Origin: Chlorokybus atmophyticus
Taxonomy: Eukaryota > Plantae > Mesostigma and Chlorokybus algae
NCBI GenBank assembly: GCA_009103225.1
Contig: RHPI01003330.1
Span: forward strand, 194,472 to 258,471
Direction of reading: 5' to 3'
Length of the DNA stretch: 64,000 nucleotides
In this document: positions 4,628-19,086 of the stretch, one piece after another
Layout: each line of letters starts with the position of its first letter
Position numbering within the stretch: position 1 is the stretch's first letter
Translations under genes and position numbers: made by a program
Notes under the pieces: model-generated
What the model was told of the DNA's origin: nothing
The model's input: only the letters and a program-made list of their open reading frames with translations
The model's database searches: none

Positions 4628-6458
<1,831 letters not shown>

Positions 6459-9558: not shown

Positions 9559-11252
9559 TTAGCAATCTCCGAACCTCAACCCGCGCGCCTTAGCCATCTC
9601 TCGCACCCGCTCAGCCGCCTCCTCCACATCCTCAAGCCCTCTATACCTCCACCCCTCCCCTACCAAGCTCTCTCTCGTCAAAACTCGCGTCGCCCCCCGT
9701 CTCGTGAGTCGCTCATGAAAGGCGCGCAGCTTCCCCGTGGCGTGGTTGGCGCCGATGACGCAGACGGGTGTTCCTGTTGAGCACGCCTCGCTGACCATGT
9801 TGACGGAGTCGGCTGTTACGATGAGGCGGTTGGACCAAGCCAACATGGCAAGGTAGGGGTTGGGGCCACGACCGTCCCAGACTTGAATATCTTGAGGACC
9901 TCTGCACTCTGCTCTCATGTCATTGTACAGAAAAGCAACATGTTTGGTCAGTAACGAGTGACTGGTAGCAAGTGCAAGGGCTATACTTGCTACCAGGAAA
10001 TGATTCAATAAACGATTGAGTGAGTGCATTCACAAACTCAACAGACACTCATAGGCCATACGCTATGACTTGTGCGCAAAAGTTCGTACATGGGATGAAC
10101 TTCAACAACAACTTGCTGTCCACACCTGCGAGCGTGGCGTGAAGGCGTCGTGCAAGCGCATCCGGCGTTCGTTGCGAGAGCGTAATCCTTGCACTTCCAC
10201 CCGTCTCACGCACCACCTCACCCACCACGCGCACGAGCTCCTCCACGAGCTCAACACCGTACGAGCACGAGCGCGCGGGTCCCCCCACGCACACGGTCAC
10301 AAGCGGCTTCGGGAGAGACCCGTACTCATCTCTCCACTGTTCTTTTGCCTTCTCCAACGCAGACTTGCTCACTCTATGCAGGGACCCCTCAGTGAGAATG
10401 ACATTACCTGAAGGGTGAGGGACGAACCAACGTAATGACCCGTCGGCTTTGAGCCAATCGTGCCTTGGCGTGATGACCGCGTCGAAGTGTGATACATCGC
10501 AGCGCGGGTGCTGAATCTGTATGAGAAAGATGTTGTCACTGGCTATGCGTTTGGCTTCTAATGCGGCTGCGACGGTGTCGCGACCAGATGCGACGACGAG
10601 TAAGGGTCCCTCATGTTGTTGTTGGTCGGCAAGGTCTGCGATGCGGGTGGCGAGGGCGTGGGGATCCGTGTAGCTGGTGACGCCTTGGTGTTGGGTTGTA
10701 GGTGTGTCGGCATGGCTCCACCAGGATGCGAGCTTCGTGTGCCAACTGACCGGGAGCGCGCGCAACAGGGAGGTGAAGGCTCCCCCATCCGGTCGCACGA
10801 TTCGCTGCAGATGGATTACATGACCACGCGCACATGCACTGTTACTGTGCATGTGCGCACATACACCCAAGAAGACATACATGTGTGCATGCGCACACGC
10901 ATGAGGCGTGCGATACACACATATGCAAAGAAACATGCGTCTGCGTACCCGCAATCACCCTCACACAATCACTCATGCACACGCATGCTCGCTCGTACAT
11001 GCGCATACGCAATCAGCCGCTCATAATCTCTACCCCCTCGCACTACCGCCACACCCACATTACTCAGCTAAAACCATACGTCCCTGCACCCCAACAACAC
11101 ACACTCACCAGCACCTCCCACACGGGCTCGACCTCCTCCTCCTCCCCCTCCCCCTCCGGTCCCAGCAGCGCCTGTACGAGCCCCCGACACTGGTTCTCCG
11201 CCCCCGCGGCGCCGTTGCCGATCACCACGCCGCAACGGATGACGGAAGGCAT
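9559..11252 (-). CDS. ELM1: Mitochondrial fission protein ELM1-like
   Basis: VVIGNGAAGAENQCRGLV, LVVASGRDTV, IQIQHPR...FDAVITPRHD, KPLVTVCVGGP, ITLSQRTP, VWDGRGPNPYLAMLAWS..IVTADSVNMVSEACSTGTPV: motifs typical of plant ELM1. Confidence 0.9.
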
Positions 11253-14781: not shown

Positions 14782-16153
14782 AAGTGAGTTCAGGAGTATG
14801 CACCCAAGAAGAAAGAGGGACGTGTTACTGCATGTTGCTGCGAGAGAACTGATGGTTATGGCCAGCTTGTGGGTTCAAGACTTTGTGACCTGGTGTGGGG
14901 ACTGCTACGGTGCATGGAAAACATACAGTGCACATGACTGCACCAAGCTTAATCCAACAGTCCATTGGTTGGGTATAGCATGCCAGGCAGCAGGACAATC
15001 CGTCTTGCTGTCATTTGTACCTTTGGGCCTGAGGTTGCACCCTCCCCACCATGGCTCAGGGCTTCTACTTCACACAGGTTTCGTATATCCCCTTGTGCTT
15101 GAACGCATCATGGCATCTAGTTCCCGTTGGCACATTCTCAGCAATGAAGACGCCCCCTACAGCTCTGCACGCGAAGGCCTAGTTGCAGCCTGCGCTTACA
15201 GCGCAGTAGTAGTATAGCACTGTACCCCTCAAACCACGCTGGTGGTGACAACCCTTGCGCGAAACAACAATACTTACAATACAAACAAAGCAACAGACGC
15301 CGCCACCCTCATACACACGCGCGCACCGCCACCTTCGCACAACACCGCCACGGCTGGGCTCCTGTTCGCAGTGCACAAGGCTGCAGCACAGTGGTGGCAG
15401 GCGCAGAGTCCCCCGATTTGGGTGGGAGCGCACGTGACTTCCCGCGCAGATCGCTGCCACCACACTCCCCGAGTTCAGTGATCTTTAGAGCAATCGGCAA
15501 TCCACACCCGCGGGATCACTAGTCGTATCAACGCGTGTCACGTGACTGCCCTGCTCCCATGTACTGAGGTGGCGCCAGGCAAGCCCCACTGGCGGCAGCT
15601 GCGTGGCTGGCGTACATTGTCAAAACGTCGAGGTCGCTGTAGCCGGGCCAGAACCCCATGCCTGCGGTGCAGAAGGATGCTGGATGTCACACCGTACTGT
15701 GATTGCGTGCCAGAGTGAGCAAGCCACTTGAGAGTGTGCGGAGCCAGCATTCTCGCGCACTAGTGATAAAGGCGGTACGCTCGTGCTGATTTTCCACCAA
15801 TTCCCCTGCGGCCCAGGAAGTGCATGCTATGCAAGGTCTTTGAGAATTGTATGAAGTTGTGGTTTACTGAGTCATGGAAGTGCATCATCAGCAATGGAAG
15901 TTTGCAGCTTTGTAAATGTCCTTCACAAACAATGGTAGTGAACACTAAGGGTGCCTGACATGGCGACTCCACCAATCATTGTGCTACACAAGCACCGATG
16001 TCGGATTTGCTGTAGTCAAGGTCTGTGTCGCTATCAACAGAAAAACAACTATTTACACAGTTGATATTTACGCAGTAATAAACTGGCTGAGTCAATGAAT
16101 TCAATCTGTTACATCTACCTGTACATAAACCAAACACATACCAATGGCTGACC

Positions 16154-18374
16154 TCAGCAGTCAAGCGTTGTATCCCGCTCCCACTGCGTCAAGTGGCCCA
16201 TGAAGTCATCCCACTGTTGTATCTTGAGCTTGATGTAGCTGTCAATAAATGAACTCCCAAGCCCCTCCCGCAAGGCCTGCGCCACGTTGATGACACAATG
16301 CATTCAGCGTATAGACTGATCGGTGAACAGCTCACAACCTGGTTTTTGTGCGTTGGAAGCACATTGACCCACCCAACCTGACTGTGACTACCATCCTGTT
16401 CAACAGCTTACCGCTTAGCATGTTCATCTTTGAGCTACCTTAAGTCGCGACTGTGACTAATGGCTGCAAGCGATACCTGGCAGCTGTGCAGAGCACGCAG
16501 GGCGTCTAGGAGGTTAGCCGGTAGCCGGCGGACCTCTTCAGCCGTGTGCGCATGATACTCGTACATGTTGTTGTCCATGCGTGGCCCCGGGTCTGCGCCG
16601 GTTTTAACGCCGTGCAGCCCGGCAGCCAGCAACGCCGCTTGCAGAAGGTACGGGTTCACAGCTCCATCTGCTAACCTCAACTCAAGCCGTGACGCATCCG
16701 GTATTCTGTTAGAAGTTTCATCAACAACCCATGGGGTAAGTTAAGAGTGGTTCATGAACAGTGGTTCATGTCACTGACCGAATCATGTGGGTGCGGTTGT
16801 TGCCTGTGTATGAGATTGTGTTTGGCGCCCAAGTCGCCCCGGAGTGAGTGACGGGTCCGTTTGTGCGCTTGTAAGAGTTGACTGTGGGGTTGGTGATCGC
16901 TGCAAGAGCTTCTGCACAGCTGAGAAGTCCAGCAATGAAGCTGTACGCCAGCTTGGACAAGCCCTGGTATGAGCTTGTTTATGTGAGCACTCCATTGACT
17001 GTGACACAACACATGCCTCTGAAAGCACACGTACAACATTGCACATCGGCTACTAACCTTCTCGTCATTCTTGTCTGCAAACAGGTTCTGAGCGCCGTCT
17101 GGGGACCAAAGGGAGGCATGCACATGGCATCCGTTTCCGGTGAGCTGCGCAAATGGCTTCGGCATAAAAGTTGCCCTAAAACTGTGCTTCTCTGCAACGC
17201 TCTTCACCATGAACTTGAAGAAAGCGTGCCTGTCTGCCGTCACCACCGCGTCATCATACTCCCAGTTCATCTCGAACTGTCCGTTGGCATCCTGCAACGC
17301 AATGTGTGATCATACGAACTGTGCATACTGACCCTCATCAGCAAAACACACACAATTCACGCACAACACGTTTCATACTCCTGTATGATCTGCAGTCAAA
17401 GCCATGTCATGCCTACCTCATGGTCGCTTTGGTAAGGCTTCCAGCCTAGCTGCTGCATGTAGTCACAGACCTCCGTGATGATGTCGTACCTGCGCATGAT
17501 GGCACCCTGCAAGGACAGCACTGCATTGGTGTAGTGTGCGTGACAGGTGTGATTCCTTCCTGGTCTGCCATCATGGCGACTTTCTGCTTCAAGTAATACA
17601 CATGTCAAGTTTGTTGAAATCCTGACCTGGTCGTAGCATGGTTTGTCAGAAGTGTCCCGCACATCGGCAATGCTTTTGCCATCCTCAGCAAGCAGGAAGA
17701 ACTCGCACTCTACACCCGTTTTCAAAACGAATCCGTGCTTCGCGGCCTCAGCAACCTGACCGTGGGACAAGAAGAGCAACGTTGTCGGCAGTGGCATCGC
17801 ACACAAAGGCATGATGATATGTTTCAAACGCCCACCTGTTGCTTGAGCACAGTGCGCGGCACTTGCGCTATGGGTTCGCCATCCATAAACAGGTCCGCAG
17901 CCACCCATGCCAGCTGGGGCTTCCAAGGCGCTTGCATGACACTTGAAGCGTCTGGAAATGCAAGCTGGATGATGTGGGAGTGTCTAAGTAAGGTTGGCGA
18001 CACTCGTATACAACTCAACTCGACTGCCTGTGGCGCTGTAGCTACAGCTAATCAGAGTACAAGCCAGCAAATGACAGTTGTTACCACGTCAGGATGAGCA
18101 GGTGTGAGGTCCATATGAGTGGCAAACCCAGCGAAGCCTGCGCCATTAGTGCACATCTGGCCAATTGCTGCTGCTGGCACCAACTTTGAGCGGGCCACAC
18201 CAAACAGGTCGAGGAAAGTAATCTGCAAGCCAGCACGCCAGACACATCAACCAAGCTGCACAAGTGTTGGGGTCCACGATGCCACGCACCTACCATGAAG
18301 TACTTGATCCCCTTCGTTCTGGCAAACTCCTCGAGGTAAGGTGCAGCGTTTTCCGCAGCCGGCTGCCCCACCAT
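16154..18374 (-). CDS. glnT: Bacterial-type glutamine synthetase III / gamma-glutamylmethylamide synthetase family (GlnT/GmaS-like), 9 exons
   Basis: Spliced product: FARTKGIKYFM-ITFLDLFGVARSKLVPAAAI...GAGFAGFATHMDLTPAHPDV-LAFPDASS...PWKPQLAWVAADL...KTGVECEFF...KPCYDQ...YQSDHE-DANGQFEMNW...FMPKPFAQLTGNGCHVH...NPTVNSYKR...SGATWAPN...GNNRTHMIR...ELRLADGAVNPYL...WERDTTLDC*. All 8 introns are GT-AG and keep frame. Confidence 0.92.
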
Positions 18375-19086
18375 TGCATGCAGCTGGTCTTACAATGTAC
18401 TCAAGGGCCTTCCAGAGCAGGCAGTCAACTGAGACAGTGCTGGTTGGCAAAACAGTAGTGAAGAGCTGCGTTGAATGCTTGTTCCTCCTGTTGACGGTTG
18501 ACTCTCAGAATCCCAGGCATGCAGCGTGCGCTTGGTTGACTGCCGGTAGTGCGCAGTAGCTCACAAAAGCAGAAACGATGTCATGTGCTTCTGCAACAGC
18601 CCAGTTCACCGACCAGCACACAAACCACTGCTGTTGCCGTTAAACTTACATAACTTTGCAGCACAGCAGATGCTGCTGACAGACAGGGTGTCTGAAGTGC
18701 TGCAAGTGCTGTGTGGTCTCTCGTTGTCTCTACAGCACCCCGACAGCCATTGCAACAAACAACACGCAGCAACAGCAGCCCAGCTGCATAGTCAGCACAC
18801 AAACCAGTCATGCATGTGGACACGGATCTATCATTCTCAATAACACCACCTGTCTGCGCGCACCACCGCCTCCACCTTCGCAACCACATCCACATACAGA
18901 GCCTTGCTTGCCTTTCAGCGCTGCAAGCGACACTGCATTAAGCATGCTTGCATAGAGTGTTATGCTTATATGCAATCTGGAATACGCAGGCTCTCTATGC
19001 GGGTTACGTTGAATTACGCAAGACGGCGTAATTGACCTAAAGGGGAAGGCTTTCTATACACTTCTTACGTGGCTGAATTGGTGGCG

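What the first reader, a model, noticed from the sequence alone, without database searches (positions are those of the whole stretch)
16154..18374. Intron-bearing bacterial GlnT/GmaS (gamma-glutamylmethylamide synthetase-like) gene in an alga
Seen: a complete 9-exon gene whose product follows the bacterial type III GS/GmaS family end to end (GIKYF, GAGFAGFA, TPAHPD, PWKP, SGATWAPN, GNNRTHM, WERDTTLDC*) and does not resemble eukaryotic GSII. Eight spliceosomal introns and ordinary eukaryotic neighbours argue against contamination. Known: GmaS starts the N-methylglutamate pathway (with MgsABC/MgdABCD) and also makes theanine from ethylamine. Inference: an old, domesticated horizontal transfer that may let the alga capture methylamine nitrogen or make GMA/theanine-type amides. 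No mgs/mgd genes are present in this window.
Basis: partly seen in the sequence, partly recalled or inferred. Interest (0 to 1): 0.85.

Follow-up and report, generated by a model that had tools for sequence, protein, structure and literature searches.

The report
Bacterial methylamine-glutamate ligase gene in Chlorokybus
The early-branching green alga Chlorokybus carries and expresses an intron-filled nuclear gene for a bacterial-type enzyme (GmaS) that joins methylamine to glutamate; it was most likely picked up from a proteobacterium long ago, and what the alga uses it for is untested.

Summary
On the minus strand at 16154-18374 lies a 9-exon, 8-intron (all GT-AG) gene for a 445-aa protein. 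Spliced transcript contigs from two Chlorokybus lineages cross all eight predicted junctions.

The exons tile NCBIfam TIGR03105 (GlnT/GmaS) from position 15 to 435 of 435. The protein is 57-66% identical, almost without gaps, to alpha- and gammaproteobacterial GmaS. All 22 functional residues of the solved Rhodovulum GmaS are kept, including the two changes that set GmaS apart from true glutamine synthetases.

In the closest named bacterium the gene follows mgsABC-like genes. The algal copy has host-like base composition. Of 38 codons that differ between the two lineages, 33 are synonymous.

In the tree it falls inside the proteobacterial GmaS clade (99/97). Nesting within the sampled crown is not proven (AU p=0.40). 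The only other named eukaryote found, Paulinella, sits elsewhere, with borderline rejection of a shared origin (AU p=0.05).

The transfer reading is supported. Methylamine or theanine use is only inferred, and a lone GmaS cannot release methylamine nitrogen. The rest of the genome was not searched for mgs/mgd, and eukaryotes were sampled poorly. First readers have flagged many other intron-bearing bacterial-type genes in this genome. Moderate interest.

The parts
16154..18374 (-). Whole coding region (ATG to TGA) of the GmaS-family gene; 9 exons, 445 aa
18294..18374 (-). Exon 1 (27 aa). The first 13 aa have no bacterial counterpart, and there is no long N-terminal extension
   Evidence: junction 18222|18294
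18085..18222 (-). Exon 2 (46 aa). Holds Lys40 (= RhGmaS Lys30') and GAGFAGFA with Ala58 in place of the GS Asp50'
17836..17964 (-). Exon 3 (43 aa), end of the N-terminal domain (PWKP)
17627..17755 (-). Exon 4 (43 aa). Holds Glu132 and Glu134 (metal/ATP) and Tyr157
17417..17506 (-). Exon 5 (30 aa). Holds Tyr184, Gln185, catalytic Asp187 and Glu189
17058..17291 (-). Exon 6 (78 aa). Holds catalytic Glu196, plus Asn198, Trp199, Tyr201, His245, His247 and Ser249
16779..16963 (-). Exon 7 (185 nt, ends in phase 2). Holds the flexible loop Lys299-Ile317 with Trp312 in place of the GS flap Glu, and Arg324
16477..16705 (-). Exon 8 (229 nt). Holds Arg329 (split codon) and Glu337
16154..16276 (-). Exon 9 (40 aa plus TGA), C-terminal WERDTTLDC
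16002..16153 (-). 3' UTR, at least as far as the X1 transcript contig reaches
   Evidence: table 8 (record 1 covers 16002-16275)
18375..18600 (-). 5' UTR (the transcript contig runs about 279 nt further upstream). Contains an in-frame TAA at 18392-18390 and an out-of-frame ATG at 18379-18377

Best explanation
This is a nuclear, expressed gene for a gamma-glutamylmethylamide-synthetase-family ligase (GmaS; NCBIfam 'type III glutamate--ammonia ligase', GlnT). A Chlorokybus ancestor most likely acquired it from a proteobacterium. The gene has since gained eight spliceosomal introns and host-like codon composition. The protein has no long N-terminal extension over its bacterial relatives, which suggests (untested) a cytosolic location. 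By homology with Rhodovulum GmaS it should be an ATP- and Mg-dependent enzyme. Such an enzyme phosphorylates the gamma-carboxyl of glutamate, then lets a small primary amine attack it; methylamine is preferred, and ethylamine, hydroxylamine and, poorly, ammonium are also accepted. The product is a gamma-glutamyl alkylamide. Shown here: gene structure, splicing and expression, family membership, conservation of every catalytic and binding residue, purifying selection, and a bacterial affinity. Inferred: the substrate, the oligomeric state, the cellular role and the exact donor. Possible roles are trapping or detoxifying methylamine, an entry step to methylamine nitrogen if downstream enzymes exist elsewhere, or making gamma-glutamyl amides.
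For: Gene model and splicing: (eight junctions in two lineages). Family: TIGR03105 is hit by all eight exons of 30 aa or more, colinear over 15-435 of 435. The scores sum to about 519 bits against a cut-off of 469.6, and are far above GlnA and PuuA-type models. Pfam Gln-synt_C hits are colinear. The best solved structure for exon 6 is 7CQL (Rhodovulum GmaS) at 122 bits, against 63 bits for the best true GS. Identity is 57-66% over 432 aa to alpha- and gammaproteobacterial proteins. All 22 RhGmaS residues for ATP, Mg, glutamate, methylamine and catalysis are conserved; they include Ala58 for the GS Asp50' and Trp312 for the GS flap Glu. In the closest named relative (Sphingomonas formosensis, L042) the homologue directly follows MgsA-, MgsB- and MgsC-like genes. 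Tree: inside the 65-row proteobacterial GmaS clade (UFBoot 99 / SH-aLRT 97), with the cyanobacterial type III clade outside. Long residence: GC3 is 0.655, like the neighbouring ELM1 gene (0.62-0.63) and unlike the close bacterial homologues (0.81-0.93). Selection: of 38 codons differing between X2 and the window, 33 are synonymous and 5 are conservative changes.
Against: No biochemical data exist for this protein. No mgsABC is in the window, and the rest of the genome could not be searched, so the fate of the product is unknown. The AU test does not reject a tree in which all sampled proteobacterial sequences exclude Chlorokybus (delta lnL 4.3, p=0.40). The donor lineage, and strict nesting within sampled bacteria, are therefore not established. 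The Chlorokybus branch is long (0.96 against a median of 0.33), which allows some functional drift. RhGmaS and, from memory, rhizobial GlnT also turn over ammonium, so a minor GS role is not excluded. The TIGR03105 total is a sum over exons, not a score of the whole protein.
Confidence: 0.72

Rival explanations
1. It works in the alga mainly as an extra glutamine synthetase, assimilating ammonium. Rhizobial GlnT ('GSIII'), a member of the same family, was first described this way.
For: NCBIfam names the family 'type III glutamate--ammonia ligase'. RhGmaS accepts NH4Cl as a substrate (PMC7948447). No downstream NMG genes are in the window.
Against: The paper reports a much higher Km for NH4Cl than for methylamine. 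The protein lacks both GS ammonium-handling residues: Ala58 replaces Asp50' and Trp312 replaces the flap Glu. From general knowledge, green algae already have GSII enzymes for this task.
Confidence: 0.12
2. It is not a lineage-specific transfer. It belongs to an older gene shared by several eukaryotes through one ancient acquisition, with Paulinella and other algae also descending from it.
For: A second eukaryote, Paulinella chromatophora, has a family member (P0058, 47-49% identical). Paulinella groups with marine metagenome sequences (P0299, P0302), and the neighbours of P0302 look weakly eukaryote-like. The AU test rejects Chlorokybus+Paulinella only marginally (p=0.0498). My searches could not target eukaryotes and listed only 120 hits each.
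Against: Chlorokybus is 57-66% identical to proteobacterial proteins but only 47-49% to Paulinella. In the free tree they are separated by branches with 99/97 and 100/100 support, and the constrained tree is 46.5 lnL worse. Plant NodGS is about 845 aa by my recollection, and no hit near that length is among the 150 best representatives for exon 6.
Confidence: 0.12
3. It is bacterial contamination or a mis-assembly, or a dead relic of a transfer.
For: High similarity to bacterial genes.
Against: There are eight GT-AG introns, each removed in transcript contigs of two lineages. Base composition is host-like. The gene lies in a 20-kb stretch free of N together with eukaryotic genes. The frame is intact and synonymous changes strongly outnumber others.
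Confidence: 0.01

Closest known systems
Gamma-glutamylmethylamide synthetase of Rhodovulum sp. 12E13 (RhGmaS, PDB 7CQL; PMC7948447)
   Same: The two proteins are similar in length and align over their whole length. 7CQL is the best solved-structure match. All 22 residues that the paper assigns to ATP, Mg2+, glutamate and methylamine binding and to catalysis are identical, including Asp177, Glu186 and Arg312. The two GmaS hallmarks, Ala48' and Trp300, are also kept.
   Different: The algal gene is nuclear, has eight introns and is not in an operon. It carries 13 extra N-terminal residues and a one-residue insertion near residue 376. Its activity is untested.
Proteobacterial gmaS in mgsABC-gmaS clusters of the N-methylglutamate pathway, e.g. 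Sphingomonas formosensis locus L042
   Same: 66% identity over 432 aa and the same family model, TIGR03105.
   Different: In the bacterium the gene directly follows MgsA-, MgsB- and MgsC-like genes. In the alga no such genes lie within the 64-kb window, and their presence elsewhere in the genome is unknown.
Rhizobial GlnT ('GSIII'), the founding member behind the NCBIfam name (from memory)
   Same: Same NCBIfam family.
   Different: GlnT was described by its weak GS activity. No GlnT sequence was compared directly here.
Methylovorus-type glutamate--methylamine ligase (PDB 9QUR)
   Same: Same reaction by the depositors' name, and the same fold family.
   Different: It is a more distant branch. 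The close bacterial proxy P0219 scores 366 bits to 9QUR against 631 bits to 7CQL.
Paulinella chromatophora GS-like protein (EukProt, P0058)
   Same: It is the only other named eukaryotic member found, and it falls inside the same 65-row clade.
   Different: It is only 47-49% identical, has an N-terminal extension of about 70 aa and internal insertions, and lies in a different part of the tree.

Membership tests
GmaS / GlnT (NCBIfam TIGR03105, 'type III glutamate--ammonia ligase') | Full-length match to the family model above its curated cut-off (469.6 bits) | tested here: met
   The eight exons of 30 aa or more match model positions 15-435 in order. Scores are 49.3+43.5+45.5+36.3+126.4+96.6+89.3+32.5, about 519 bits in total. 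This is a sum over pieces; the spliced protein could not be submitted whole. A close bacterial relative scores 682.7 bits.
GmaS / GlnT (NCBIfam TIGR03105) | Catalytic residues Asp177, Glu186 and Arg312 (RhGmaS numbering), plus the ATP, Mg and glutamate ligands | tested here: met
   Asp187, Glu196 and Arg324 are present, and all 19 other listed residues are identical.
GmaS / GlnT (NCBIfam TIGR03105) | Loss of the GS ammonium-handling residues: Asp50' replaced by Ala, and the Glu-flap Glu replaced by Trp | tested here: met
   Ala58 and Trp312 (definition from PMC7948447).
GmaS / GlnT (NCBIfam TIGR03105) | Phylogenetic placement with GmaS rather than with other GS-like groups | tested here: met
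   It falls inside the 65-row proteobacterial clade, supported at 99/97.
GmaS as part of the N-methylglutamate pathway | Presence of mgsABC and mgdABCD in the same genome | not testable with these tools
   No mgsA/B/C lies in the 64-kb window. mgd was not searched.
GmaS (EC 6.3.4.12) | Preference for methylamine over ammonium | not testable with these tools
   This needs an enzyme assay.
GSI (GlnA, TIGR00653) | Best match to the GlnA model, with Asp50' and the flap Glu present | tested here: not met
   GlnA scores are 46-72 bits per exon against 89-126 bits for TIGR03105 on the same exons. Both residues are replaced.
Eukaryotic GSII | Closest similarity to GSII enzymes | tested here: not met
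   In the PDB hit list for exon 6 at E<=1e-5, the entries I could place are a GmaS, a glutamate--methylamine ligase and prokaryotic GS. I recognised no eukaryotic GSII entry among them.
Gamma-glutamylputrescine synthetase (PuuA, NF045547) | Match to the PuuA model near its cut-off (650 bits) | tested here: not met
   Scores are 17-70 bits per exon, well below TIGR03105.

The most novel reading that the evidence does not exclude
Chlorokybus, and perhaps separately Paulinella and some marine protists, uses a bacterial GmaS as a working eukaryotic route for methylated amines. The route could capture methylamine nitrogen together with downstream enzymes not yet found, or make gamma-glutamyl alkylamides of the theanine or GMA type as nitrogen stores or detoxification products. 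That would be an origin independent of the tea plant's theanine synthetase.
Probability: 0.3. Interest if true: 0.65.

Novelty: new member of a known kind. Interest (0 to 1): 0.45.

Why it matters
In the papers I could search, GmaS is treated as a bacterial marker for methylamine use in oceans and soils. I found no paper describing a eukaryotic one. An expressed, conserved copy in the alga most distant from land plants among streptophytes would be a clean case of a transferred enzyme kept for a long time. If the substrate preference holds, it would show that some algae can handle methylated amines directly rather than relying on bacterial cross-feeding. It also means gmaS reads in metagenomes need not all be bacterial. 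The enzyme family and the phenomenon are both well known, and first readers have flagged many similar intron-bearing bacterial-type genes in this genome. The finding is therefore solid but not surprising in kind.

Tried and rejected
1. Exon 2 donor at 18088 (444 aa). Rejected in favour of 18085 by the alignment and by transcripts.

2. Retrieving the algal protein and eukaryotic orthologues from the large protein collection. The spliced protein cannot be given by reference, so I tried three routes: exon 6 alone against the cluster representatives, profiles made of scaffold rows plus the nine exons (A1; A7), and the Paulinella protein as query.
- Every list was filled with bacterial GmaS, and the algal protein never surfaced.
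- This is no evidence of absence. Only the top 120 of at least 8000 hits are shown, and even some alignment rows did not reach the list.

3. Alignments of the exons against one scaffold or near-identical scaffolds (A2, A3, A6). They misplaced the short exons and were not used.

4. The 'closest' hits by exon 6, with 77-88% local identity. I suspected they were eukaryotic exons, but most look like frameshifted high-GC bacterial genes, with a few AT-rich fragments left unresolved.

5. The search for related loci with the exon-bearing alignment failed for lack of conserved columns. It was redone with full-length rows.

6. A tree with very long outgroup rows gave unstable placement. It was replaced by a trimmed set and a careful search.

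7. Notes on this genome were searched for mgs/mgd-like genes without result.

8. The ESM Atlas look-up of exon 6 returned only generic clusters of GS fragments.

9. No structure prediction was run. Identity of 57-66% to close relatives of a solved structure made it unnecessary.

Full report
**Observation**

The minus strand between 18374 and 16154 carries an ATG, nine coding segments and a TGA. The eight intervening sequences all start with GT and end with AG. They are 71, 120, 80, 120, 125, 94, 73 and 200 nt long, with seven in phase 0 and one in phase 2. The spliced CDS is 1338 nt and encodes 445 aa. An in-frame TAA lies 16 nt upstream of the ATG.

Two independent lines confirm the model.
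- The exons align end to end with full-length bacterial proteins. No residue is lost at any junction, and there is one single-residue insertion (A4).
- Logan contigs from two runs of one study are spliced at exactly the eight predicted junctions. X1 is identical to the window; X2 is about 94% identical and has an in-frame 6-nt deletion. A third run (X3) holds short unspliced pieces that include intron sequence, as expected for genomic DNA.
- The transcripts also fix the one ambiguous donor, so exon 2 ends at 18085.

The gene is therefore real, expressed and spliced in at least two Chlorokybus lineages. The organism name comes from earlier notes of this scan.

**Not contamination**

- The gene has introns that are removed in RNA.
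- It lies in a 20-kb stretch without N (8839-28873).
- Its composition (GC 0.56, GC3 0.655) matches the neighbouring ELM1 reading frames (GC3 0.62-0.63). It does not match its closest bacterial homologues (GC3 0.81-0.93).

**Family**

Pfam places exons 4 and 6-9 in order along Gln-synt_C. NCBIfam TIGR03105 ('type III glutamate--ammonia ligase', the GlnT/GmaS family) is the best model for every exon of 30 aa or more. The matches cover model positions 15-435 of 435 in order. The summed score is about 519 bits against a cut-off of 469.6, whereas GlnA and gamma-glutamylputrescine synthetase score much lower.

Exon 6 alone matches PDB 7CQL, the Rhodovulum GmaS, at 122 bits. The best true glutamine synthetase reaches 63 bits.

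Against full-length proteins the best identities are 63-66% over 432 aa. All of these are proteins annotated as type III glutamate--ammonia ligase or glutamate--methylamine ligase, from Alpha- and Gammaproteobacteria and from metagenomes. Against one genome per species the range is 57-66%. The top named species is Sphingomonas formosensis at 66%. In that genome the homologue directly follows three genes. Their products match a class-II amidotransferase, a GXGXG (FwdC-like) protein and the FMN domain of glutamate synthase. That is the mgsABC-gmaS arrangement of the N-methylglutamate pathway.

**Active site**

The structural paper on RhGmaS (PMC7948447) lists four groups of residues.
- ATP: Glu122, Tyr174, Gln175, Trp189, Tyr191, His237, Ser239, Arg312, Arg317.
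- Mg2+: Glu122, Glu124, Glu179, Glu186, His235, Glu325.
- Methylamine pocket: Tyr147, Gln175, Asp177, Glu179, Glu186, Asn188, Lys30'.
- Catalysis: Asp177, Glu186, Arg312.

The paper also gives two features that separate GmaS from GS. Ala48' stands where GS has the ammonium-binding Asp50', and Trp300 stands where GS has the flap glutamate.

I mapped these through the 7CQL alignment of the close proxy P0219 and a pairwise alignment to the algal protein. All 22 positions are identical in Chlorokybus. They include Ala58, Trp312, Asp187, Glu196 and Arg324.

**Selection**

One search lists 40 of the 98 differences between the X2 transcript and the window. Of these, 34 fall on third codon positions, 6 on first and none on second. 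They affect 38 codons: 33 changes are synonymous and 5 are conservative replacements. The full list was not available, but this pattern is that of a gene under purifying selection.

**Phylogeny**

I built a careful IQ-TREE search (LG+C20+F+G4, PMSF) on 71 rows.
- The rows were Chlorokybus, Paulinella, 49 named genome loci thinned at 78% identity, 14 metagenomic or named proteins, three cyanobacterial type III proteins and three distant GS-like outgroup rows.
- Very long rows used in a first quick tree were left out.

Chlorokybus falls inside a 65-row proteobacterial GmaS clade (UFBoot 99 / SH-aLRT 97). Within that it sits in a 55-row clade (80/80), and then in an 18-row clade whose named members are all Alphaproteobacteria (63/95). 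Its branch is long: 0.96 against a median of 0.33.

- An AU test does not reject a tree in which all 61 proteobacterial-crown rows exclude Chlorokybus (delta lnL 4.3, p=0.40). Nesting within sampled bacteria, and hence the donor group, is suggested but not shown.
- Paulinella chromatophora (P0058) was the only other eukaryotic protein that surfaced. It groups with two metagenome proteins (100/100) away from Chlorokybus.
- Forcing the two eukaryotes together costs 46.5 lnL, with p-AU 0.0498, which is borderline.

The direction of transfer rests on three things. The gene sits in an operon in bacteria. And only two named eukaryotes were seen.

**Function and mechanism**

By homology, the protein should bind ATP and then glutamate, form gamma-glutamyl phosphate, deprotonate an incoming amine with Asp187, and resolve the tetrahedral intermediate with Glu196. 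The product would be gamma-glutamylmethylamide, or theanine if the amine is ethylamine. RhGmaS has its lowest Km for methylamine. It also accepts ethylamine, hydroxylamine, propylamine and, with a much higher Km, ammonium.

What the alga does with the product is unknown. A lone GmaS does not release nitrogen from methylamine; that needs NMG synthase and NMG dehydrogenase, or another demethylating step. No mgsABC is in the window, and the genome could not be searched. Three roles are plausible:
- trapping or detoxifying methylamine, an ammonium analogue;
- entry into an as yet unseen downstream route;
- synthesis of gamma-glutamyl amides.

A minor GS role cannot be excluded, but the missing ammonium-handling residues argue against it.

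**Limits**

- The spliced protein could not be handed to the large protein searches, so eukaryote sampling is weak. All three searches listed only the top 120 of thousands of bacterial hits.
- I found no open-access paper describing a eukaryotic GmaS or this Chlorokybus gene. That is absence in a limited library.
- First-reader notes show many other intron-bearing bacterial-type genes in this genome. As a kind of event this one is ordinary.

**Verdict**

The family assignment and the old, domesticated transfer are well supported. The physiological reading (methylamine nitrogen capture, theanine-type amides) is an untested inference. This is a new eukaryotic member of a known bacterial enzyme family, of moderate interest.

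Noticed in passing
window 18377-18379 (minus strand): An out-of-frame ATG lies 5 nt upstream of the start codon. Its context is weak (T at -3), while the main ATG has A at -3 and G at +4. On the unspliced sequence it opens a 29-codon frame overlapping exon 1, so leaky scanning is presumably needed.
   Followed up: partly
window 16268-16481: Run X1 holds a second, low-depth contig (214 nt, depth 5.2 against 38.7) that covers intron 8 unspliced. This could be intron retention, pre-mRNA or a trace of DNA.
   Followed up: no
window 16555: The sister-lineage transcript (X2) has an in-frame 6-nt deletion in exon 8, within the variable stretch between the conserved DPGPR and RLPxNLLDA segments (near codons 378-381).
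   Followed up: no
window 9559-10954 (minus strand): Two adjacent reading frames match Pfam Mito_fiss_Elm1 (profile positions 10-205 and 198-302). This looks like an ELM1-type gene split by an intron or frame change, about 5 kb downstream of the GmaS gene.
   Followed up: partly
L081 (Tara Oceans contig, gene at 5001-6350) and proteins P0302, P0299, P0058: The Paulinella GmaS-like protein groups (100/100) with marine metagenome proteins. The P0302 contig carries long, domain-poor genes (a 1163-aa PDZ protein and a protein of more than 1400 aa). Their nearest Atlas clusters are eukaryotic at low scores. This may be a second, marine eukaryotic lineage with a GmaS-like gene.
   Followed up: partly
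proteins P0001 (4424 aa), P0052 (2757 aa), P0002 (1356 aa): These are giant proteins with three to six GS-like catalytic stretches each, about 31-32% identical to the algal protein. Their origin and meaning are unknown.
   Followed up: no
proteins P0003-P0045 and others: Many top hits by local identity are singleton clusters. They are frameshifted high-GC bacterial gmaS genes from metagenome assemblies, where the frame changes after 'MPKPF'. Such fragments can pass for 'closest relatives' in representative searches.
   Followed up: yes
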